Shown piece by piece: positions 5,874 to 56,389 of a stretch of 64,000 nucleotides of DNA. The notes beneath the pieces were generated by a model that saw nothing but the letters and a program-made list of their open reading frames with translations, was not told the origin of the DNA and made no database searches. A program made the translations under genes and the position numbers. How positions within the stretch are numbered: position 1 is the stretch's first letter; the number at the start of each line of letters is the position of its first letter. The stretch is taken from positions 171,459-235,458 of IMG/VR virus record IMGVR_UViG_3300031997_000001; one strand, 5' to 3'.

Positions 5874-7421
5874 CTACGCGTCCACCTTGCGGGACTTCTG
5901 CTCCTCTTCCTTGCGGTGGTTCGCGTTCTGGGCGAAGTCGCTGGCCCACTTCTTCATCGACTCCAGGTCGCCCCTCCGGGACCGGGAGAGGGGCACGGTC
6001 CGCAGGATGGCGGACAGGATGTGCATGTCGTTGAGCTCCTCCTTGCGGTAGAAGCCGGTGTAGAGGCCCGAGATCACGGCCTCCTCCAGCTCCGCCCCCG
6101 AGTACCCCTCGCTGTTGGAGGCGCACTCCTTGAGGCCCTGGGCGTCGAACTTCTTGGGATCGCGGCCCCGCTTGGTGATGTGGATCTTGAGAATCTCCTC
6201 CCGCTCCTTCTCGTCCGGGAGGTCGACGTAGAAGATCTCATCGAAGCGGCCCTTCCTGAGCAGCTCAGGCGGGAGTCCGTCGATCTTGTTGCACGTCGCC
6301 ACGATGAAGACCGGCGCGGTCTTCTCCTGCATCCAGGTGATGAACGACCCGAAGACGCGGGCGCTCACTCCGGAGTCCGTCTGGCCCGAGCTGGACATCC
6401 CAGCGAAGGCCTTCTCGATCTCGTCCACCCACAACACGCAGCGGCCCACGGCCTCTGCCGTCTGGATGGCGACCCGCATGTTCGCCTCGCTCTGGCCGAC
6501 CAGCCCGCCGAAGACGCGTCCCACGTCGAACTTGATGAGCGGGACCCCGAAGTTGGCGGCGCACGCCTTCGCCGCCAGGGACTTGCCCGTTCCCGGGATG
6601 CCCGTGAGCATCACGCCACGCGGGGCGGGGAGGCCGTACTTGCGGGCGTCCTCGGTGAACGCCAGCTTCCTGATGCTCAGCCACTCCTTGAGCACCACCA
6701 GCCCGCCGATGTCGTCCATCCCCTGCTTGGCAGGGTACCACTCCAGCACGCCCGACTTCTTGATGGCGTTGGCCTTCTCGGACATGACCAGCGTGGAAAT
6801 CTGGACCTTGGACTTCGGGTCGTCCTTGGTGGACTTCTTCCAGTCCACCACGCCCTTGGCCATGGCGTTCTCCGCCTCGACCGTGGTCAGGCCCATGCAG
6901 GCCTCCACGATGGCGAAGACCTCGTCCTTCGCGACGTCCCCCACGACGGTCTTGTTCTCCGTCACGAACCGGTCGATCATCGTGCCGATGATCGCCCTCT
7001 CGGGGAGGCCGAACTCCAGGAGCGTCACGTCGCGCTGCAGCCCGACGGGCAGCTCGTTGAGCGGGCTGATCATGATGAGCGTCTTCTTGGCCGTCTTGAA
7101 CTCGCGGGCGATGTCCCGGATGAGCCGCGCGATCTTGGGCACCTGGAAGAACGGGTGCAGGTCGCGGAACAGGAACACCACCTTCTCGCCGAACGTGGTC
7201 GTGCTCTCGGCGCCGCGGATCTTCGCGAGGGCGGCGACCGGGTCGTCAACCTCGTCGATGGTCTTGCCGTTGGCGTCGATGAAGCCGTCCGTGTGGCTCC
7301 ACACGACCACCTTCCACTTGAGCTCCTTGAGGGTGTTGGCGAGCTCCAGCTCGACGCGCGCCTCCTCGGGGCTCACGACCATGAGTACCGGATAGCGGGC
7401 CTTGATGTAGCTGTCAAACAT
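5874..7421 (-). CDS. Ycf46-like AAA+ ATPase
   Basis: Walker A GIPGTGKS, Walker B LWVDEIEK, ELLRKGRFDEIFYVDLP, degenerate N-terminal AAA domain. Confidence 0.9.
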   Translation of the reverse strand: MFDSYIKARYPVLMVVSPEEARVELELANTLKELKWKVVVWSHTDGFIDANGKTIDEVDDPVAALAKIRGAESTTTFGEKVVFLFRDLHPFFQVPKIARLIRDIAREFKTAKKTLIMISPLNELPVGLQRDVTLLEFGLPERAIIGTMIDRFVTENKTVVGDVAKDEVFAIVEACMGLTTVEAENAMAKGVVDWKKSTKDDPKSKVQISTLVMSEKANAIKKSGVLEWYPAKQGMDDIGGLVVLKEWLSIRKLAFTEDARKYGLPAPRGVMLTGIPGTGKSLAAKACAANFGVPLIKFDVGRVFGGLVGQSEANMRVAIQTAEAVGRCVLWVDEIEKAFAGMSSSGQTDSGVSARVFGSFITWMQEKTAPVFIVATCNKIDGLPPELLRKGRFDEIFYVDLPDEKEREEILKIHITKRGRDPKKFDAQGLKECASNSEGYSGAELEEAVISGLYTGFYRKEELNDMHILSAILRTVPLSRSRRGDLESMKKWASDFAQNANHRKEEEQKSRKVDA

Positions 7422-28460: not shown

Positions 28461-28793
28461 CTACCGGCCGGCCTTGCAGGCGCGGCACTGGCGCACGTGC
28501 CAGAGGTCGCCGGTGTACAGCGTGCGGACCGCGCCGCACGCGCACCGGATGTCCACGGCCTGCTGCCCCCGGGCGGGGCACTTGCGCAGGGTGCCGGGGA
28601 TCATGTGCGGGTATTTGGCCAGCAGCTGCGCCTCCGTCAGCGGGGCGGCGCGGACCCAGACGGGGCGGGGGCCGACGAGCGGGGCGGCGGGGCCGGCGAC
28701 CAGCGGGGCGCGGGCGGGGGGGGGGGGGGGCCCGACGAGGGCGGAGACGCGGCGGACGGCGACGGGCGCGGCGGGGGCGAGGAAGCCGACCAC
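28461..28793 (-). CDS. KYPH-type Zn-ribbon protein (paralogue 4)
   Basis: GGAGGTGTCCC-GTG start mirrors GGAGGTGTACC-ATG of 26345; LLAKYPH...DLWHVRQCRAC. Confidence 0.7.
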   Translation of the reverse strand: MVGFLAPAAPVAVRRVSALVGPPPPPARAPLVAGPAAPLVGPRPVWVRAAPLTEAQLLAKYPHMIPGTLRKCPARGQQAVDIRCACGAVRTLYTGDLWHVRQCRACKAGR

Positions 28794-28814
28794 GGGACAC
28801 CTCCGTTGTGTGCC

Positions 28815-29095
28815 GGGCCGGCGGGCCGCGGGCGCGCCCCCGGGACAGGCGGGGGCGGGACGCGGGGCCGGACGCGGCGGACGCGGGCGCGCCCCCCGGA
28901 CGGCGGGGGGCGGGCGCGGGGCCGGGGTCGGGGTCCCCCCCCCGCCGGGGGCGGGGGGCGGGCGGCGGGCGGGCCCCCCGGCGGGGGGGCGGCGGGGCCG
29001 CCGGGGGCGGGGGGCGGCGGGGGCCGGGGGGCCGGGGGGCCGCGCCGCCCCGCCCCCCCCGGGGGCCGCGGCGGGGGGCGGGCGGGCGGTCCCGT
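28815..29095. other. almost pure G/C low-complexity tract (possible base-calling artefact)
   Basis: Very few A/T, long G and C runs; the many overlapping ORFs here are spurious. Confidence 0.7.
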
Positions 29096-33354: not shown

Positions 33355-34204
33355 TTATTTCCCTTTCATTTCATGGGCCGCAATCACCGCGTTGCAGACG
33401 GCACGGGCGGGGTGCTTGGCAGTGCCTTCCCAGTCGACCTCGTTCCACGCGTCATCCGCGGTTCCTACGACGTAGAACCACCCGGCTACCCACAGGTCAA
33501 GCTCTTCGTGGTAGATCAGGCTAAAGCGCCCGGTGAGAGCAGGTCGCTTGCCGACGCGCAGGCGCAGCCCTATCTTCTTGACCGCCTCCATCGCGTCATC
33601 AATGCATCGGGCGGGCGTCCAGGAGTGGGAATCCGGGATGTTCACCCACTCGCTTTCGAAGACGCCTCCGGTAGCGCGGTCGTCGCGCTCCCAGCAGCCG
33701 TGGTCATCGGCATAAGGCTTGGGAGACGGCCAGACGAGGTCCATCCCCTCCTTGTCCCAGGACCAGGACTTCCATGTCATGCCGAGGATCTTGGAGGCAA
33801 TGAAGACGTCTGCCTCGTCGTCGGTCATCGCTGCTATCTGTTTCTGGCTAAGCATGTTTCGCCTCATGGGCTGCAATGACTGCATTGCAGACGGCGCGGG
33901 CGGGGGCGCTATGCGACATCCAATCCACTACGGCACCCCATCCGGCCATCCACTTCTTCGTACCTAAATTCCAGACGAGACCAAAAGTCAATCCCTCTAA
34001 TTCCAGCCCCATCTTCCCCGCCGCCTCGACAGCCTGGTTGAGATCGGTGGCAAACTGGGCGGCATAAGAACTCGTTCGGCTGATATCTCCCGTCCACCAG
34101 GTGCCGTAGGAGAATGTCCACCCCATCACCTTCTCGGCCAGATACTTGCTGGCCTCCGCGTCGGTGAGTGCCTCGATCTGCTTGCGAGTAAGCAGGGTAA
34201 GCAT
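33355..34204 (-). CDS. two tandem phage ABA-sandwich (BC1872-like) domain paralogues (33355-33885, 33848-34204)
   Basis: Both show iA.kvmGw...[F/W]....id.A.eav.K...PARAVCNAVIAAHE; ML...QI.A.TD.EA starts. Confidence 0.65.
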
Positions 34205-34783
34205 TTTATCCTCCTGATGGCTGGTCCGTGGATTCCCGGAGGGCAGAAACGCTGTGGACTATGTCGTCCGCCGGGAGGCCGCACAAGCGGCAGGGTTCCT
34301 GACCGGCGAAGCGCTCCGCCTTGCCGTCAAACCCGTGCATCTTACACAGGGCTCGCTCGAGCTGCTGGACCCTCTGGCGAAGAGCTTCCGCGGTCGATTC
34401 CTGGAATCCTTGGGCTGTCATGTTAGATCACTGAAAGCTGGTCCGCAACCCGTGCTTCGGACAGGTCTTCGCTTCCCATTTCTCGCCCTTCTGAGGCAGG
34501 CGCAGCTTCCTGCTGGTCAGAGCACGCCAGGCAAGCCAGAGGTCAGTCAGCCTCTTGAACATCTTTATTCCTCCGACTGGATAACAATCCCTACCAGTGA
34601 AATACGGGTCCGAGAAGCATATCGAACTAGGTATGACACTGACATCTACACCATCTATCATGACAGAGGTTGTGCAATTCTGTTTTGCACCACCTACTTC
34701 TTTTCGTGCGATGCTTGCGCTTCAGTTTGGATGCTTTCATATTTCATCGAGGGCCTGGGCATTGCCGCCCAGGCCCTCTCTAT

Positions 34784-35398
34784 CTAGTCAATCGGCTCCC
34801 ACTTCAAGATCTTGAACTTGCCGAACACACCGCGGTAGGTCCCGATCCCGATGGCGTAGCCACCCTCCTGGATCAGGTTACGGATCTGCACTTCCTGGAT
34901 TTCGGTATTCGGAAGAATTGTCAGCTGGAACTCGAGCTCCCAAGGCAGCGGGAGGACCGGCCGGACCTTCGGGTTCGGCACCCCATCCTTCAGCCGGGCA
35001 ACCCGCCGGTCGATGTAGCAGCCCGACAGGGCGTCCTTATCCCCGTCGAACTTCCCGAACTTGATCGGCTGATTGTCCTTCAGGAAGGGGATCATCATCG
35101 GCTCGATGATGGTAAAGGAAAGGCACGAATTCGCAATCGACAGCCCCTTCTTGCCCCGCAGCCGCCTGGGCGCCGACACCGTGTTCTTGGCCGACAGGAA
35201 CGAGTGGATGTTCGCCGCCGGGAGGCAGATGTTGCGCTCTTCGTCCAGGTAGAGCTTCTGCATCGGCTCCAGCTTCGTGTCGTTGTCCCCGGCGTACCGG
35301 TCGAACATGACCGCCGTGATGCCCTGAAGCCGGACCAGCCGCCTGATCATGTCCTTCGTGCCGGCTTCCGCGACGACCGCCTTCGATTTCGCAACCAT
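34784..35398 (-). CDS. stand-alone Cas7-like RAMP protein (204 aa; Vipr-like)
   Basis: First strand VRLQGITAVMF, ICLPAANIHSFL helix motif, WELEFQL strand, C-terminal G-rich loop GGYAIGIGTYRGVFGKF; GGAG RBS 8 nt before ATG 35398. Confidence 0.8.
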   Translation of the reverse strand: MVAKSKAVVAEAGTKDMIRRLVRLQGITAVMFDRYAGDNDTKLEPMQKLYLDEERNICLPAANIHSFLSAKNTVSAPRRLRGKKGLSIANSCLSFTIIEPMMIPFLKDNQPIKFGKFDGDKDALSGCYIDRRVARLKDGVPNPKVRPVLPLPWELEFQLTILPNTEIQEVQIRNLIQEGGYAIGIGTYRGVFGKFKILKWEPID

Positions 35399-35417
35399 TG
35401 ACGGATCTCCAAAAAAG

Positions 35418-36003
35418 AAACCCTGCCTTGCCGCGCCGAGCCCGGCCAGGCCCTGCCCGGCAGCGCCGCGCCAAGCCTTGCCGTGCCTCGCCGTGCCGAA
35501 GATTCCTTTGTAAAAGCTAGCCTTGCCTCGCACTGCCCTGCCTCGCCCAGCCAGGCCGGGCCGGGCCTGGCCCCGCACCGCCTGGCCCCACCGGGCACCG
35601 CCTCGGACAGAAGATCTTGTAAGAAGAGCTGGCCTTGCCGTGCACTGCCGTGCCTCGCCCCGCCGGGCGCGGCCATGCCCTGCCTCACCTTGCCTTGCCT
35701 CGCCCAGCCGTGCCAGGCCGGGCCCGGTCAAGTTGGCAGTCAATGTTTCGTGTTGTAAGAAGAGCTAGCCTTGCCTCGCTGCGCCCTGCCCCGCCCCGCC
35801 TTGCCGCGCTTTGCCTCGCCCGGCCCGGCCGCGCCCCGCCCTGCAAAGCCCAGCCACGCCGTGCCGTACCTTGCCCGGCCGCGTCTTCACGTAATGCTTC
35901 TTGTAAAAGAGCTAGCCTTGCCTTGCCTTGCCCTGCCCCACCTGGCCCAGCCTCGCCGCCGCCTTGCCTTGCCTGGCCGCGCCCGGCCCGGCCGAGCCGT
36001 GCC
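35418..36003 (-). repeat. five-block GGY-NN pentamer array (putative guide-RNA array)
   Basis: Blocks 36003-35913 (18 units, one is 6 nt), 35880-35766 (23), 35724-35630 (19), 35602-35518 (17), 35497-35418 (16); 84/93 units begin GGY; linkers 20-41 nt all contain TTACAA. Confidence 0.9.
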
Positions 36004-36015
36004 CCGACTCAGACA

Positions 36016-36504
36016 TTACTCCAGCAGCAACATCGTCGCGGGCTTCATGTCCAGCTTCTTCTGGAGCGCGATGCAGGTCTCCAGCAGCCGCTCTCCGACC
36101 TTCGGCGACTCGATCTTCTTGTGCAGGCCCATCTTCGTGACCGCCGCGTTCAGCACCGCCTTCTGCTTGGCGTCGAGCGCCGTCATGTCGATGACAGCCA
36201 GCTGCCCGATCGTCTTCCTCGCCTTCCGGCCGATCCTCTGGCCCGCCTCGTCGGCCACCCCGACCGCCTCCTCGTTCGAGACCCGCTTGATTCCCACTCC
36301 CCGGATCGGACGCCAGAAAGCACGCTCGCGCCAGAGGGTCTTCAAGGCAGAGGCGACCACGTGTGCACCATTTCCGGCCAGCCGATGTGTGACTTCCGAC
36401 AACTTCTCATGCGACACAATCTCACCGACCGGCTTGCTCCGCAGGAACCGGATGAGTTCCTCCGTGTCTGCGGAACGCCGGAAGGCCGGACTCTTCCCGT
36501 CCAT
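36016..36504 (-). CDS. putative winged-helix DNA-binding protein heading the array operon (162 aa)
   Basis: GGAGG RBS, ATG 36504; helical N-terminus then FWRPIRGVGIKRV wing-like hairpin; stop lies 12 nt before array block 1. Confidence 0.6.
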   Translation of the reverse strand: MDGKSPAFRRSADTEELIRFLRSKPVGEIVSHEKLSEVTHRLAGNGAHVVASALKTLWRERAFWRPIRGVGIKRVSNEEAVGVADEAGQRIGRKARKTIGQLAVIDMTALDAKQKAVLNAAVTKMGLHKKIESPKVGERLLETCIALQKKLDMKPATMLLLE

Positions 36505-36551
36505 TTCGTGCCTCCCGAAAGGATTGTCGAAAACCTTCACCCAACTAGATC

Positions 36552-36581
36552 ATTAAAATACAGAGGGGAATCTCCCGTCAA
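36552..36581 (-). promoter_or_regulatory. sigma70-type promoter TTGACG-N18-TTTAAT driving wHTH-array-RAMP
   Basis: Same N18 spacing and similar spacer (GGAGATTCCCCTC) as the 10982 promoter. Confidence 0.6.
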
Positions 36582-36684: not shown

Positions 36685-37353
36685 ATGAGTAAGCAGGTCA
36701 AGAGCGACGGCCGGGTCCAGAAGGTAATGCGGATGGTATTCGACTACGGCACGCCGAATAGGTTCACTAACGAAGAACGTGCCAAGGCCATCACATACGA
36801 GCACCTGAGGTGCTGCGATCTGAAGACCATTGAGGACATATATAACGCGTGTTCCATGTTTGATATCCTGGATAGGCCCTGCGGCGACGGGGACATGGCC
36901 GTGCGCGGCAAGCTCGAGAAATTCATCGAGATTAGGAAGAAACAGTCGCCGACATATCACACGAAGCCAACCCAAATTGACGACGCTGAGATCAGAGAAC
37001 TTTTGGCGGAGGCTTGTTCGCCTGAGCCAAAATTGGTGCGCCGCCCTGGAATGGCCACGCCCGAGGAAGGGCTCCGCAAGTGGGTTACCGAAAAGGTCGC
37101 TTCCGAGATCCCCAAACAGATCCGGCGGGATTTTGGAGGGAAGGGTAGGGACGAGTCCATTCTCTGCCTGGCGAAGCAGTTGGGCCTCGAGCGGTACATT
37201 AGTTCAACGACAGCACGGGCCACGGTCGCTATCTCTGTCTATGATCTCCTGGGGAAACAGATCGAAGGATGCCGCAAGCGGGTGGCGTCCAAAGTGGAGG
37301 AACTCAAGAGGCGGGCGGAGCGCGGTGATTCTGCAGCCAGAACAGATTCCTAG
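36685..37353 (+). CDS. hypothetical protein, divergent from the RAMP operon
   Basis: AAGGAGG RBS; 222 aa. Confidence 0.7.
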   Translation: MSKQVKSDGRVQKVMRMVFDYGTPNRFTNEERAKAITYEHLRCCDLKTIEDIYNACSMFDILDRPCGDGDMAVRGKLEKFIEIRKKQSPTYHTKPTQIDDAEIRELLAEACSPEPKLVRRPGMATPEEGLRKWVTEKVASEIPKQIRRDFGGKGRDESILCLAKQLGLERYISSTTARATVAISVYDLLGKQIEGCRKRVASKVEELKRRAERGDSAARTDS

Positions 37354-41929: not shown

Positions 41930-44147
41930 CATTCCTGGAACGGCTGGAACAGGCGATCAACGAAGTCATTTCCGGGCGCCATGCGATGGCTCTCGATCCG
42001 CGGACGTTCTTCGATGTAAAGCTTACCAATGACCGCTCGGTCGGTGACATCATCGAGGTGGACTGGCGGGCCGAGCTCAAGCATGACAAGCCGGATTTCG
42101 GCAAGAAGAGGCCCATCGCGGCGGATGGCGTTGCGGTCGCGGCTCCGGGCCAGAAGGCAGAAATAGAAGTCCTGGAGTGGGAAGTGGGCGGCGTGACGAT
42201 TCCCAAGAACCTCTGGCACAACAACGTCCGCGGCGAATGGGAAGCCGCGATCGAGAAGGACGTGCGGGCCGCCGTAGCGAACCTGGCATCGGAGAAGAAG
42301 GCAGAGGTGCCGCCTCCGCTCCCTAATGCTGCTCCTGAGGAGCCGCCTCCACTTCCTTCACGCACTGGATACCCAGAGTCTTTACGGCAGAGACTAAATC
42401 AATTGCTGGGCGAGGTTTGATGCCCGGCGAGATCCCGACAAGCTTGTACTGGAAGTTGTAGATCATCCTCCGTATGCATCCGTGGCAGACCCAGACATAG
42501 GCACCATCCCACTTATCTTCTGTGCGTTCGGCCACGCCCTGGCAGTACCTGCAGGTTGTTTCCATGGCGGCATCAAACCACAAGATTCGTTTGGCGTCAA
42601 TAATTCACTGTCTCGTATTTAAAAGCCATGTCTCCCATGCCTCTATCTGGTTGGGCTGGAGTCCAGGGCGGCCAAGGCGGCAACCAGGGTCGTTATGTGC
42701 AGAAGGCCGCAGACTTCCAGGCTATACAGAAACTCAACGATGGTCCTCCCCTCTCAAAAGATGGATATAGACAGTTCTTCTCCAAGAAACAGAGTTCTGC
42801 GGGAATATTCTTCACCGCACTAGACAAAAAGTGGAACAAAATCGGTATAACCATCCGGGGGCAGATCGATACGGACTTCGGTCCCTCCTGCATCGCTAAG
42901 GTGATGGACCTATCCGAGAAGGACGAAATTCAGAAGATCGCAGAATCGCTCGAAAAGAAGACGATGGTCTTCAAGATCAAGATAACGAACATGGGCACGC
43001 CTTATGAACCGGCCCTGGTCGTCAAGAAGACAGTGGACGTGCAGGATAGCTGGAACGGGCTTTGCAACATCCTCCTCGACGACATTACCGTTGGGCCGAT
43101 CAAGAGCAACTGGAATGTTAATATCGTGGTCACGCGGGAAGGAACTGATCCGCAGGATACCTTCGAAGGTACGTTTAATTTGAAGGATATGGAGGTATTT
43201 CTTCCGCAGGTCGCGGAGGAAATGCGAGAGGAAATGCAGGCCCAAAAAGAAGGCGCGCCAAATGTGCAAAAACAGCTCGATGAGGCGATGAAGAATCTCG
43301 AGTCGATTACGAAGGCCGTAAAAAAGCTCCAAAGTCCTCTCACCGTCCTAGATCCAAATACGTTTGAGCTAGTTCCGGCGCCACAAATGCCTGTCCAGCC
43401 AAGCGCGGCAACCCTGCCAGGCGTCATCACCGCTGAGGTCCTGAAGAACTGCGATATGGCGACGCTGCAGAAATTGAAGCAGCTCGGCATCCTGCAATTG
43501 GAAAGCAAGATCCTGCAATTGGAAAGCAAGCAGGTTCCTATTTTTGGCGACCCACTCTCCCCTCCCGCGGTCATAGACAAGCCGTCGGGATTGCCGCTTG
43601 GCAAGATGGGAGGCAGAAAGGTGGATCTAACATGAGCCCGTTAGCAGAACTCATCAAGAAATGGACAAGCAAGAAGGGAAAGGCAAGTATCCTCCCGAAG
43701 CCGATCACAGCTCCCGGAGCTGTCAATCCTAATTGGAATCCGTTGGCGGTAGACGAAGAAGTCTACATGCCTCTGGGCGTACAAGGGCTTGTGGGCGGCC
43801 CGGGAGTCCAGGGCTGGCAAGGGTCTGTGGGCTGGCAAGGGTCTGTGGGCTTGCAGGGTCTTGGAGGCTACCAGGGAGGCAGTCAGGGCAGTTGGGGCGG
43901 TTGGACCCCTGGTAATCAGGGGTTCAATAACCCGCCGCAGGCGGTCCAGGTCTCCGTCTCTTCCGCCCCCGTGAATGGGGTCAGGGAGGTCACGCTGACT
44001 GCAGAGGGCCTTGGCAAGAAGATCTCCATCCAGGGATTTGGCGTGCTGGTCTGGGACGGGAAGGAATGGCGTCTGGACGGGAGGAAGGCGGGCGAGATAG
44101 CTTCTGGTCCGATCGGCGAACTCGGAAATCGGATCATTTCTTTCTGA
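41926..44147 (+). CDS. hypothetical proteins 41926-42420, 42628-43635 (21-nt tandem duplication at 43489-43530) and 43632-44147 (Gly-x-Gln-Gly repeats)
   Basis: Long clean ORFs; GxQG repeats include an 18-nt tandem DNA repeat. Confidence 0.65.
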
Positions 44148-55321: not shown

Positions 55322-56389
55322 CTACTCGTCCTTGATCTCTTTCAAGAGACTGTCGATTTCCGCATCCGCGATCGGCCCGCCATCCGCCGGTGATTCCTCA
55401 GGTTCCGGCGCAGCCTTAGCCGCCGTGGCGGGCTTCGCCGGCTTGGTAGGGGCTTCCTCCGTAACCTCGTCCTGGAATTCCTCTGCAGGAGGAGCGGGTT
55501 TGGCTGCCGCAGGCTTTGCGGCCGGAGCAGGCTTGGCTGCTGCTGGCGCGGGTTTGGCTGCCGCAGGCTTCGCGGCCGGGGCGGGCTTGGCTGCCGCGGG
55601 CTTTTCCTCCGTGTGGTCCTCATGGAATCCGGCATCATCGCCAGCGGTGGTCGGCGACTTCTTCAGGATGTTGTCCACCTTCGCCTGGAGCGCTGCCAGG
55701 TCGCGTGCGGCGAACTTCGTGGGCACGTCATGCCGCCTGGACAGGATCTCCTTGATCTTGGCCTCGTCCTTGGACAGGGGGCCCTTGGTCGTGACCAGGA
55801 ACTTGGACTCCTCGTAGTTGTTGTAGCCGCCCTTGCTCTTGATGACGACCTTCATGACGTACCCGGCCTTCTCGTCGTAGAACAGGCCGAACGGCGCGGG
55901 ATCGTCCTCGCTGCCGGCATCGTCCCGCAGAATGCACTCCTCGCACTTGTCGTAGAGCGTCTTCGGGATGTTGGCCCAGAAGACCTTGCCGCGGAGGTCT
56001 TCCTGGACGTTGGTAGACTGTGGGAAGTAGATGTTGACGCCGTAGTAGCTCCTGGCGAGGTACGTCTTGGCGATCTTGCTCTTCTGCTCCTTGTCCATTC
56101 CGTCCATCAGCTGGAAGCCGAGCTGACAAAGCGGGCACTCCGCCCCCTGTTCATGAATGCGCGGGCATTCCAGCCGCTTCATGTCCAGGAAGTGGCTGCC
56201 GTTCATGTAGAACCAGAGGTCGCCCATGCTCGGAACGGGCGGTAGAAACTTGATGTAGTAGGTGAGCGTCTCGTTTTCCTTGGCCTTGGGGAACCGGAAC
56301 TCGTTCGGATCCTTCTGCCCGCCGCCCTTCTTGTCCTGCATCAGCTTGCGGATCCTGGCAATGTCCTCGTTCTCGCGGATCACGGTCAT
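55322..56389 (-). CDS. T4 gp32-like single-stranded DNA-binding protein with AAKP repeats and acidic tail
   Basis: IKFLPP, H...CP...ECP.C, YYGVNIY, GKVF, GYNNYEESKF, acidic C-terminus. Confidence 0.8.
   Translation of the reverse strand: MTVIRENEDIARIRKLMQDKKGGGQKDPNEFRFPKAKENETLTYYIKFLPPVPSMGDLWFYMNGSHFLDMKRLECPRIHEQGAECPLCQLGFQLMDGMDKEQKSKIAKTYLARSYYGVNIYFPQSTNVQEDLRGKVFWANIPKTLYDKCEECILRDDAGSEDDPAPFGLFYDEKAGYVMKVVIKSKGGYNNYEESKFLVTTKGPLSKDEAKIKEILSRRHDVPTKFAARDLAALQAKVDNILKKSPTTAGDDAGFHEDHTEEKPAAAKPAPAAKPAAAKPAPAAAKPAPAAKPAAAKPAPPAEEFQDEVTEEAPTKPAKPATAAKAAPEPEESPADGGPIADAEIDSLLKEIKDE

What the first reader, a model, noticed from the sequence alone, without database searches (positions are those of the whole stretch)
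34784..36581. Cas-free, putatively RNA-guided module: wHTH gene + five GGY-NN pentamer blocks + stand-alone Cas7-like RAMP (VIPR-type)
Seen in sequence: one minus-strand unit reads promoter (36581-36552), 162-aa gene, 586-bp array, RBS, 204-aa gene. The array has 93 units in strict 5-nt register: positions 2-3 are always G-Y, position 1 is G in 84/93, and positions 4-5 vary freely. One unit is 6 nt. Established: the 204-aa protein has RAMP/Cas7 hallmarks (beta1 strand, xxPxxxIxxxL helix motif, C-terminal Gly-rich loop), and Cas7 proteins polymerise along guide RNA at a fixed nucleotide step. Inference: each pentamer seats one RAMP subunit on the GGY and displays NN as information, so each block is a distinct guide. 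No cas1/2/3/5/6 or CRISPR array is in the window. From memory, this matches the recently described VIPR (GGY/NN guide + Vipr RAMP) architecture used in phage-phage conflict; I cannot verify that here. It may therefore be a new member, with five guides and an accessory gene, rather than a new class.
Basis: partly seen in the sequence, partly recalled or inferred. Interest (0 to 1): 0.97.

Follow-up and report, generated by a model that had tools for sequence, protein, structure and literature searches.

The report
Phage VIPR RNA-guided silencing locus
This stretch of a 235-kb phage genome carries a complete VIPR system (a small Cas7-like protein, a DNA-binding helper gene and five guide RNAs built from GGY-NN five-base repeats); VIPR was first described in 2026 preprints, so this is a new member of a known kind, not a new class.

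Summary
On the minus strand, 36003-35418 holds 93 five-nt units in five blocks. Position 2 is G in 93/93, position 3 is C/T in 93/93, position 1 is G in 84/93, and positions 4-5 are near-random. One unit has 6 nt.

The 204-aa protein folds as a single-RRM RAMP (pLDDT 89). Its best structural matches are all type III/VII Cas7-family subunits. Its only PDB sequence match is the SUSP1 Vipr protein (profile E 0.0015; hhalign 88.5% against a SUSP1-clade Vipr).

Of 99 related loci, 89 have strict same-strand GGY-NN arrays next to the homologue, and 6 more have relaxed GG-NNN arrays. The upstream 162-aa gene folds as a winged helix plus a helical domain (pLDDT 96). It is a remote homologue of SUSP1-clade Vap1 (hhalign 84.6%).

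The source is an IMG/VR phage contig. I found no cas genes and no CRISPR array.

Local differences from the studied systems: the order vap-vrRNAs-vipr, 16-23 units per block against the reported 9-16, a short tail with no predicted fold, and a T-Y-R G-loop where SUSP1 has D-W-R.

I identified no target. Expression, processing and binding are inferred.

The parts
36552..36581 (-). Promoter-like TTGACG-N18-TTTAAT upstream of vap (unverified)
   Evidence: Read. Not called by the sigma-70 consensus scan. It sits in the divergent intergenic region facing ORF 36685-37353(+).
36016..36504 (-). vap: 162-aa winged-helix accessory protein, Vap1-like
   Evidence: GGGAGG lies 7 nt before the ATG. AF2 pLDDT is 95.6, with wH topology plus a C-terminal helical domain. 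Foldseek best matches are wH DNA-binding domains. The family profile matches the Ada/MGMT wH domain at E 0.0026. hhalign against phage ekra Vap1 gives 84.6%, E 6.8e-6. The family has 477 cluster representatives. Synteny with vipr and arrays is seen in L104, L011 and L124.
35901..36003 (-). vrRNA block 1: 18 GGY-NN units (9 + one extra base + 9) plus tail GCTCTTTTACAA
35753..35880 (-). vrRNA block 2: 23 units plus tail GCTCTTCTTACAA
35617..35724 (-). vrRNA block 3: 19 units plus tail GCTCTTCTTACAA
35507..35602 (-). vrRNA block 4: 17 units plus tail GCTTTTACAAA
35411..35497 (-). vrRNA block 5: 16 units ending GGCAAGGCAGGGTTTCTTTTTT, directly abutting the vipr RBS
   Evidence: The same type of ending before an RBS occurs in L104 and L107.
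34784..35398 (-). vipr: 204-aa single-RRM RAMP (Vipr)
   Evidence: AF2 pLDDT 89.4. The top 50 Foldseek PDB hits shown are all type III/VII Cas7-family subunits, best E 8e-6. The top PDB sequence hit is SUSP1 Vipr, 36pp_D: E 1.6 with the single sequence (the only hit), E 0.0015 with the profile. hhalign against phage ekra Vipr gives 88.5%, E 2.7e-6. phrog_4652 matches at E 9e-7. More than 2100 homologues.
34749..34778 (-). 13-bp GC-rich hairpin just after the vipr stop codon; likely end of the transcription unit
   Evidence: RNA fold gives -30.8 kcal/mol, z = -6.0, and 0 of 200 shuffles fold as well. There is no U-tract, so the terminator scan did not call it.

Best explanation
This is a phage-encoded VIPR (Viral Interference Programmable Repeat) system. 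It consists of a Vap1-like winged-helix accessory gene, five tandem vrRNA genes and the vipr gene, probably transcribed as one unit from upstream of vap to the hairpin after vipr.

By homology with the SUSP1 and P. fulva systems, the likely mechanism is as follows. The repeat RNA is cut or trimmed near the short AU-rich tails. One Vipr protomer binds each pentamer. Thumb and G-loop sequester each GGY, and the NN dinucleotides are displayed. The filament then reads double-stranded DNA of the form NNx-NNx (one target base skipped per unit), forms a gapped R-loop, and blocks transcription of the bound gene. The Vap protein assists in vivo. The probable targets are genes of a competing phage, prophage or satellite in the same host.

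Shown here: the sequence anatomy, the protein folds, homology to characterised Vipr and Vap1, strand-specific co-occurrence of arrays with homologues, the viral context, and the absence of cas genes and CRISPR arrays.

Inferred, not shown: transcription, processing, RNP assembly, DNA binding, silencing, and the identity of the targets.
For: - Array anatomy and statistics.
- Vipr fold: pLDDT 89.4. Top 50 PDB structural matches are Cmr4/Csm3/type VII Cas7-type RAMPs. Three viral RAMP-like matches in BFVD.
- Homology to SUSP1 Vipr: the top PDB sequence match, profile E 0.0015. hhalign 88.5% over 133 columns. The thumb Arg aligns (SUSP1 R138 with R146), and the G-loop aligns (GVGDWRPRFGRF with GIGTYRGVFGKF). 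R146, R189, G184, G186, G190 and G193 are invariant in 38 clade members.
- Co-occurrence: 89/99 related loci have strict arrays within 800 bp on the same strand, against 5 opposite-strand arrays in 854 kb. Six more loci have relaxed GG-NNN arrays.
- Positive control: the same detector recovers five arrays in the SUSP1-type locus of phage ekra.
- Vap. Conserved vap-array-vipr order in L104 and L011. Vap relatives sit beside divergent Vipr-like genes in L107, L109, L124 and L125.
- Viral context: IMGVR_UViG_3300031997_000001, 235,458 bp. Phage replication genes in the window.
- No Cas families or CRISPR repeats.
- Published mechanism.
Against: - No target was found. No match exceeded shuffled-guide controls in the window plus 103 loci. 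Exact 9-10-unit seed scans of IMG/VR and metagenomes gave nothing, or gave seeds that did not extend.
- Blocks of 17-23 units exceed the 9-16 repeats reported.
- The tails are short and have no predicted structure (z about 0), unlike the SUSP1 pseudoknot.
- SUSP1 D177, whose alanine mutant abolishes silencing, is Thr here (T187, nearly invariant in the clade).
- Homology to SUSP1 Vipr and Vap1 is remote (probabilities 85-88%, against single-sequence templates).
- The promoter was not called by the scan.
- The VIPR type (I-VII) could not be assigned, because the paper's supplementary tables are not held.
Confidence: 0.9

Rival explanations
1. It is a VIPR-type RNP whose output differs from transcriptional silencing of a rival mobile element. 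Possibilities are host-gene takeover, self-regulation of the phage's own genes, RNA targeting, or recruitment of a nuclease encoded elsewhere in the 235-kb genome.
For: No rival-element target was found. Some VIPR types couple to nucleases or helicases. SUSP1 Vipr can also pair with ssRNA in vitro. vrRNA block 5 lies in the vipr 5'UTR, which would permit feedback on vipr expression. One 10-unit seed of block 2 matches a gene whose translated context resembles an ABC-transporter ATPase (my reading, not searched); it lies on large metagenome contigs that look chromosomal.
Against: The accessory gene is a nuclease-free winged-helix protein homologous to Vap1 of the silencing-type SUSP1 system. 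No self-match above chance occurs in the 64-kb window. The seed hit scores 25/46 NN overall, with the skipped base at codon position 1 rather than the wobble position, which is what chance would give.
Confidence: 0.08
2. The repeat tract is a neutral GC-rich microsatellite, or the coding 5' extension of the 204-aa gene (ORF 34784-35743, 319 aa), and has no RNA function.
For: Long ORFs run through the array on both strands. A database gene call (P0001, 264 aa) fuses part of the array to the protein.
Against: A 5-nt period cannot keep a reading frame. A GGAG RBS and an ATG sit at 35410-35396. Homologues are 190-215 aa and align from the ATG. Arrays of different lengths and NN content flank homologues in about 95/99 loci, on the same strand, both upstream and downstream of the gene. 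GGY is fixed while NN is near-random, the opposite of slippage-driven repeats.
Confidence: 0.01
3. It is a degenerate or orphan remnant of a CRISPR-Cas type III/VII module, with a lone Cas7 and no function in this phage.
For: The closest solved folds are Csm3/Cmr4/type VII Cas7.
Against: No CRISPR repeats and no other Cas families were found in 81 ORFs. The protein has a single RRM and belongs to a family of more than 2100 members with its own conserved motifs and its own repeat type. Sequence similarity points to Vipr, not to any Cas7.
Confidence: 0.01

Closest known systems
SUSP1 / Felixounavirus type II VIPR (Vipr + Vap1 + four vrRNAs; bioRxiv 10.64898/2026.04.26.720920, .720927, 2026.10.15.759431; PDB 36pp)
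   Same: Both have a small single-RRM RAMP of about 200 aa with thumb and G-loop, GGY-NN pentamer arrays on the same strand, a constant last unit and 3' tail, a Vap1-type winged-helix partner, a phage genome, no cas genes, and several guides per locus.
   Different: Gene order is vap-vrRNAs-vipr here, against vrRNA-vipr-vap1-vrRNAs in SUSP1. Y is C in 95% of units here, whereas T predominates in phage ekra. Blocks hold 16-23 units, against 11-15 in phage ekra. The tail is about 12 nt, AU-rich and shows no predicted fold, against a pseudoknot of about 40 nt. The G-loop is T-Y-R, against D-W-R. Protein similarity is detectable only by profile methods. The host phage is a 235-kb uncultured phage.
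Uncultured and prophage relatives of the same Vipr clade (e.g. L104; Pirellulales MAG L001/L084; Burkholderia phage vB_E436, PQ789831.1)
   Same: Vipr is 58-66% identical, with flanking same-strand arrays. L104 and L011 share the vap-array-vipr order. vrRNAs that abut an RBS end in GGCAAGGCAAGG...TTT.
   Different: The closest relative is only 66% identical. This Vap family is present in only 2 of the 100 vipr-bearing loci scanned. Array number (1-10) and length (6-45 units) vary. The Burkholderia phage uses a relaxed GG[C/A]-NN unit. The tail motif GGCAAGGCTAGCTCTT occurs as a vrRNA tail only in this contig.
Class 1 CRISPR-Cas Cas7 backbones (Csm3/Cmr4, type VII Cas7)
   Same: Shared RAMP fold and a fixed nucleotide step along the guide, with a thumb that flips bases out.
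   Different: Here there is no CRISPR array, no adaptation or processing genes and no large or small subunits. The step is 5 nt with only 2 of 5 bases read, not 6 nt with 5 of 6 read. The guide is genetically hard-wired.

Membership tests
VIPR system | Vipr protein: minimal single-RRM RAMP of about 20 kDa with thumb and glycine-rich loop | tested here: met
   204 aa. The AF2 model (pLDDT 89.4) has a beta-alpha-beta core, a long beta-hairpin (128-149) and a C-terminal Gly-rich loop (183-194). The top 50 Foldseek PDB hits are Cas7-family RAMPs.
VIPR system | Sequence homology to an experimentally characterised Vipr | tested here: met
   The top PDB sequence match is SUSP1 Vipr (36pp_D): phmmer E 1.6 (the only hit), clade profile E 0.0015. 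hhalign of the clade profile against phage ekra Vipr gives probability 88.5%, E 2.7e-6, over 133 columns. The relationship is remote but consistent.
VIPR system | Tandem YNNGG (GGY/NN) repeats next to vipr on the same strand, with GGY conserved and NN hypervariable | tested here: met
   93 units in 5 blocks. GGY entropy is 0.58, 0 and 0.30 bits; NN entropy is 1.91 and 1.85 bits. 89/99 relatives have strict arrays and 6 more have relaxed ones.
VIPR system | Invariable 3' tail capping each vrRNA | tested here: met
   Blocks 1-4 end in GGCAAGGC[T/C]AGCT(C)TT(C)TTACAA. Block 5 ends differently, at the vipr RBS. No stable fold is predicted. The pseudoknot described for the SUSP1 clade is absent, but it is described as a clade feature, not a family one.
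VIPR system | GGY-contacting residues of SUSP1 Vipr (R138, D177, W178, R179) | tested here: inconclusive
   In the HMMER alignment, R138 aligns with R146 (invariant), W178 with Y188 (aromatic retained), and R179 with R189 (invariant). D177 aligns with T187. The N-terminal contacts (H17, K33) could not be aligned.
VIPR system | vap accessory gene predicted to interact with DNA | tested here: met
   The 162-aa protein folds as a winged helix plus a helical domain. hhalign against the gene immediately downstream of vipr in phage ekra (taken to be vap1) gives 84.6%, E 6.8e-6.
VIPR system | No CRISPR array or cas operon; mostly viral or proviral location | tested here: met
   No Cas family at E<=1e-5 among 81 ORFs in Pfam or PADLOC. 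No CRISPR-like repeats. The contig is an IMG/VR UViG of 235 kb with phage replication genes.
VIPR system | vrRNAs are expressed as discrete small RNAs and co-purify with Vipr | not testable with these tools
   Needs sRNA-seq and pull-down.
VIPR system | Natural targets that obey the 1-nt-skip (NNx) rule at >=80% NN match | tested here: inconclusive
   Local search gave nothing above shuffled controls. Eight exact seed scans gave 0 hits, or hits that do not extend (21-25 matches, 54-69%). Only exact 9-10-unit seeds could be searched, so targets at 80-90% match would be missed.
VIPR type (I-VII) assignment | Position in the Vipr phylogeny, plus vap class and vrRNA architecture as defined in the paper's data S4 and fig. 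S16-17 | not testable with these tools
   The supplementary files are not held. The Vap1-like partner and the DNA-binding-only accessory are compatible with the silencing types (II, VI, VII), but this is not an assignment.
CRISPR-Cas class 1 | CRISPR repeat-spacer array, and cas genes beyond a single RAMP | tested here: not met

The most novel reading that the evidence does not exclude
This clade could be a distinct VIPR variant in three linked ways. Filaments would be much longer than in the studied systems (17-23 protomers per guide here, and uninterrupted arrays of up to 45 units in relatives). vrRNA ends would be defined by a short unstructured AU-rich tail, or by register breaks, and not by a pseudoknot or ribozyme. 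The last guide, embedded in the vipr 5'UTR, would couple Vipr synthesis to guide loading. The G1 pocket would also be altered (Thr for Asp).
Probability: 0.2. Interest if true: 0.55.

Novelty: new member of a known kind. Interest (0 to 1): 0.4.

Why it matters
VIPR is a recently reported RNA-guided DNA-recognition mechanism with a non-contiguous code. This locus shows that a complete, apparently intact system (Vap1-like gene, five guides, Vipr) sits among the replication genes of a 235-kb uncultured phage. It belongs to a GC-rich clade with more than 2100 members.

It gives natural examples of longer guide blocks, a different tail and a different G-loop from the two systems studied structurally. 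These are useful for defining which features of the code are universal, and as a source of alternative programmable DNA binders.

It does not change the picture of what VIPR is.

Tried and rejected
1. **Curated libraries.** Pfam, NCBIfam and PADLOC give no family for either protein. Only phrog_4652 (unknown function) matches Vipr.
2. **Rfam.** No family reaches gathering score anywhere in the window, so there are no hammerhead ribozymes between the blocks.
3. **tRNAs.** None found.
4. **Tail structure.** No fold beyond shuffled controls.
5. **Self-targeting and targeting of related VIPR loci.** Best NN matches equal those of shuffled-guide controls.
6. **Target seeds.**
   - Viral contigs, zero hits: block 5 units 1-10, block 3 units 1-10, block 2 units 3-11, block 4 units 1-10, block 1 units 1-9.
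   - Viral contigs, block 5 units 5-13: two hits that do not extend (L105 22/32, L106 21/32).
   - Metagenome contigs, block 3 units 1-10: zero hits.
   - Metagenome contigs, block 2 units 1-10: one sequence found in four contigs (L113-L116), 25/46 NN, with the skipped base at codon position 1. Judged chance.
7. **Tail 16-mer in IMG/VR.** Apart from the source contig, the hits are unrelated sequence without pentamer arrays.
8. **Conserved partner gene.** BLAST clustering of neighbours in 100 loci found no dominant partner (largest cluster 14 loci). The Vap HMM hits only L004 and L011. Vap is therefore not universal in this Vipr clade.
9. **The search for related loci with the Vap alignment.** Failed because no stretch was conserved enough.
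10. **VIPR type assignment.** Not possible, because no supplements are held.
11. **Coding or microsatellite readings of the array.** Rejected; see the rival explanations.
Full report
**1. What is there**

On the minus strand the region reads in this order:
- a promoter-like TTGACG-N18-TTTAAT (36581-36552);
- GGGAGG followed by an ATG at 36504;
- a 162-aa ORF ending at 36016;
- a 586-bp repeat tract (36003-35418);
- GGAG (35410-35407) and an ATG at 35398;
- a 204-aa ORF ending at 34784;
- a 13-bp GC-rich hairpin (34778-34749; -30.8 kcal/mol, z = -6).

A script parsed the tract into five blocks of 18, 23, 19, 17 and 16 pentamers, 93 in all.

| Position | Bases | Entropy |
|---|---|---|
| 1 | G in 84/93 | 0.58 bits |
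| 2 | G in 93/93 | 0 bits |
| 3 | C 88, T 5 | 0.30 bits |
| 4 | all four bases | 1.91 bits |
| 5 | all four bases | 1.85 bits |

All 16 dinucleotides occur at positions 4-5. Lag-5 autocorrelation is 0.55, against 0.23-0.34 at lags 1-4. Simulated sequences give runs of at most 9 units with the window's composition and 6 with the array's own composition. No other such array exists in the window.

Blocks 1-4 end in a shared motif, GGCAAGGC[T/C]AGCT(C)TT(C)TTACAA. Block 5 ends in GGCAAGGCAGGGTTTCTTTTTT, directly before the RBS of the 204-aa gene. Only the promoter is unsupported, because the consensus scan did not call it.

**2. The 204-aa protein is a Vipr-type RAMP**

No Pfam, NCBIfam or PADLOC family matches it. 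PHROGs gives phrog_4652, of unknown function (E 9e-7).

A search of 5.8 billion proteins found more than 2100 relatives, mostly 190-215 aa, from metagenomes and MAGs (Pirellulales, Gemmataceae and others). With 38 of them as an alignment, AlphaFold2 gave a confident model (pLDDT 89.4, pTM 0.84). The model has a single RRM-like core, a long beta-hairpin (128-149) and a C-terminal glycine-rich loop.

The 50 best Foldseek matches shown from the PDB are all Cas7-family subunits of type III, type VII and Cas7-11 effectors (best E 8e-6, TM about 0.5). In the viral structure library the only three significant matches include a protein annotated as a 'Cas system-associated RAMP superfamily protein'.

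At the sequence level, the only PDB chain matched is 'SUSP1 Vipr protein' (36pp_D). The single sequence gives E 1.6, and the clade profile gives E 0.0015. I then located a SUSP1-type locus in Escherichia phage ekra (L112). Its Vipr is identical to the PDB chain over the 51 residues I used as the query. A profile comparison with it gave probability 88.5%, E 2.7e-6 over 133 columns.

In these alignments:
- the SUSP1 thumb arginine R138 (salt bridge to G2) aligns with R146;
- the G-loop GVGDWRPRFGRF aligns with GIGTYRGVFGKF;
- W178 corresponds to Y188 and R179 to R189;
- D177 corresponds to T187.

R146, R189 and the loop glycines are invariant in the clade.

**3. The arrays belong to the protein family**

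The search for related loci returned 80 viral loci (79 besides the window's own contig) and 20 genome loci encoding relatives that are 48-62% identical. The window's own contig is IMGVR_UViG_3300031997_000001, 235,458 bp.

- In 89 of the 99 other loci, a strict xGY-NN run of at least 6 units lies within 800 bp of the homologue on the same strand (36 on both sides, 31 upstream only, 22 downstream only).
- That makes 212 arrays, with a median of 13 units and a maximum of 45.
- Only 5 arrays lie on the opposite strand in 854 kb.
- Six of the ten 'empty' loci, and the one cultured phage with a homologue (Burkholderia phage vB_E436, 58.5% identity), carry a relaxed GG-NNN array directly upstream.

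As a positive control, the same detector recovers five arrays (two upstream, three downstream) and their pseudoknot-type tails in the phage ekra locus.

**4. The upstream gene is a Vap1-like winged-helix protein**

The word-indexed search found only one relative (66% identical, L104). There the order is array-vap-array-vipr-array. The exhaustive HMMER search found a family of 477 cluster representatives, all about 160-175 aa.

The AF2 model (pLDDT 95.6) has the alpha-beta-alpha-alpha-beta-beta topology of a winged helix (residues 12-75), followed by a helical domain. Supporting results:
- Foldseek's best matches are winged-helix DNA-binding domains (MarR-like, PurR, OmpR-type). E-values are weak (0.03-0.1) but probabilities are 0.95-1.0.
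- The family profile matches the winged-helix DNA-binding domain of Ada/MGMT (E 0.0026), without the catalytic PCHR motif (my reading of the translation).
- A profile comparison with the gene immediately downstream of vipr in phage ekra gave probability 84.6%, E 6.8e-6 over 100 columns. I take that gene to be vap1, since the preprints name vipr and vap1 as the locus's two genes and describe a contiguous vipr-vap1 segment.

Within the Vipr clade of this window, the family is rare: only L004 (this contig) and L011 among the 100 loci scanned. But every longer contig carrying a Vap relative has a Vipr or a divergent Vipr-like gene of 187-228 aa beside it. That gene carries a G-loop of the type IG[VL]GRFRPRN.GFYGRF (L104, L011, L107, L109, L124, L125). 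Several of these contigs also have GGY-NN arrays.

In SUSP1, both vipr and vap1 deletions cost the phage 10^4-fold in plaquing on satellite-bearing hosts.

**5. Context**

The window encodes an NAD-dependent DNA ligase, RecA/UvsX, a DnaB-type helicase, a gp32-like SSB, a PolA-type polymerase, a 5'-3' exonuclease and a PDDEXK nuclease. This is the replication region of a very large phage.

No Cas family appears among 81 ORFs at E<=1e-5 in Pfam or PADLOC. There are no CRISPR-like repeats, no Rfam family (so no inter-guide hammerheads) and no tRNA.

**6. Comparison with the literature**

VIPR systems were described in 2026 in three preprints:
- bioRxiv 10.64898/2026.04.26.720920;
- the cryo-EM companion 10.64898/2026.04.26.720927;
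- 10.64898/2026.10.15.759431.

They report the following. Vipr is a minimal RAMP. vrRNAs are 9-16 YNNGG repeats followed by an invariable tail. One protomer binds per repeat and sequesters GGY. The NN bases pair with dsDNA while skipping every third target base, forming an R-loop triplex. The result is PAM-less transcriptional silencing of competing phages and satellites. There are seven types and six vap classes, and 667 representative systems drawn from NCBI.

The window's locus meets every sequence-level criterion (see the membership table).

It differs from the studied type II systems in six ways:
- gene order (vap-vrRNAs-vipr);
- GGC rather than GGT units;
- longer blocks (16-23 units);
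- a short AU-rich tail with no predicted fold;
- Thr-Tyr-Arg rather than Asp-Trp-Arg in the G-loop;
- a 235-kb uncultured phage as carrier.

I could not assign a type, because the supplementary data are not held.

**7. Targets**

I followed the published rule (replace GGY by n and search both strands). No site in the window or in 103 loci exceeded shuffled-guide controls. This agrees with the reported absence of self-targeting.

Only exact patterns can be scanned in the large collections. Eight seeds of 9-10 units were tried:
- six gave nothing;
- one gave two hits that do not extend (21-22/32);
- one gave a single sequence present in four large metagenome contigs.

That last sequence matches only the ten seed units (25/46 overall), and the skipped base falls on codon position 1 rather than the wobble position. 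I judge it chance. The targets therefore remain unknown, and the biological role (inter-phage or anti-satellite conflict) is inferred from the characterised systems.

**8. Verdict**

This is a genuine, apparently intact VIPR locus, and so a new member of a recently described kind. It has some clade-specific features worth a specialist's attention, but it offers no new principle.

Noticed in passing
window 1-38000 vs 40000-64000: G+C drops from 0.59-0.67 on the left to 0.48-0.57 on the right, although both parts carry phage replication genes (ligase at 772-1923; DnaB, PolA, SSB and RecA at 55-62 kb). This could reflect a mosaic genome or an assembly join.
   Followed up: no
window 28600-29050: A dense G-rich imperfect tandem-repeat region (periods 7-63 nt, GGGGCGG-like) lies inside overlapping long ORFs on both strands. 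It is not pentamer GGY-NN, and its nature is unknown.
   Followed up: no
window 33355-33885 and 33848-34204 (minus strand): Two adjacent paralogous small genes (176 and 118 aa, 31.5% identical) lie about 0.6 kb downstream of vipr, beyond two small ORFs. No PHROG match was found for the 176-aa gene and no NCBIfam match for the 118-aa gene.
   Followed up: partly
P0001 (264 aa); L001 6624-7265; window ORF 34784-35743: Public gene calls fuse vrRNA arrays to vipr, or call ORFs inside arrays, because GGCNN repeats lack stop codons. This is a systematic annotation artefact around VIPR loci.
   Followed up: partly
L113-L116 (metagenome contigs of 4.6-800 kb): One identical sequence matches units 1-10 of vrRNA block 2 exactly under the NNx rule, but not units 11-23 (25/46). 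From its translated context it looks like an ABC-transporter ATPase (not searched). The skipped base falls at codon position 1. Probably chance, though block 2 might be two guides.
   Followed up: partly
L123 (Burkholderia phage vB_E436, PQ789831.1) 2374-2448: This is the only cultured phage with a close Vipr homologue (58.5% identical). It has a 15-unit array with GG[C/A]-NN units directly upstream of the gene, so position 3 is not strictly a pyrimidine in this subclade.
   Followed up: partly
L109/L110/L111 and L125: Vap-family genes sit next to divergent Vipr-like genes of 187-228 aa in phage RecT/RusA/UvrD or DnaN contexts. Neither the strict nor the relaxed detector found an array there, so the repeat type may differ or the guides may lie elsewhere.
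   Followed up: partly
window 5874-7421 (minus strand): A 515-aa AAA+ ATPase matches phrog_8638 strongly (E 2.5e-136) and the PADLOC IetA models (E 1.2e-20).
   Followed up: no
window 43489-43530, 43811-43861, 55494-55601: Short, near-perfect tandem repeats (21 nt x2, 18 nt x2.9, 54 nt x2) unrelated to the VIPR locus.
   Followed up: no
P0121: The exact Vap protein is recorded on 12 contigs, the longest 284,750 bp. The phage, or a close variant, has therefore been assembled repeatedly, and its genome may be larger than the 235-kb IMG/VR contig.
   Followed up: no
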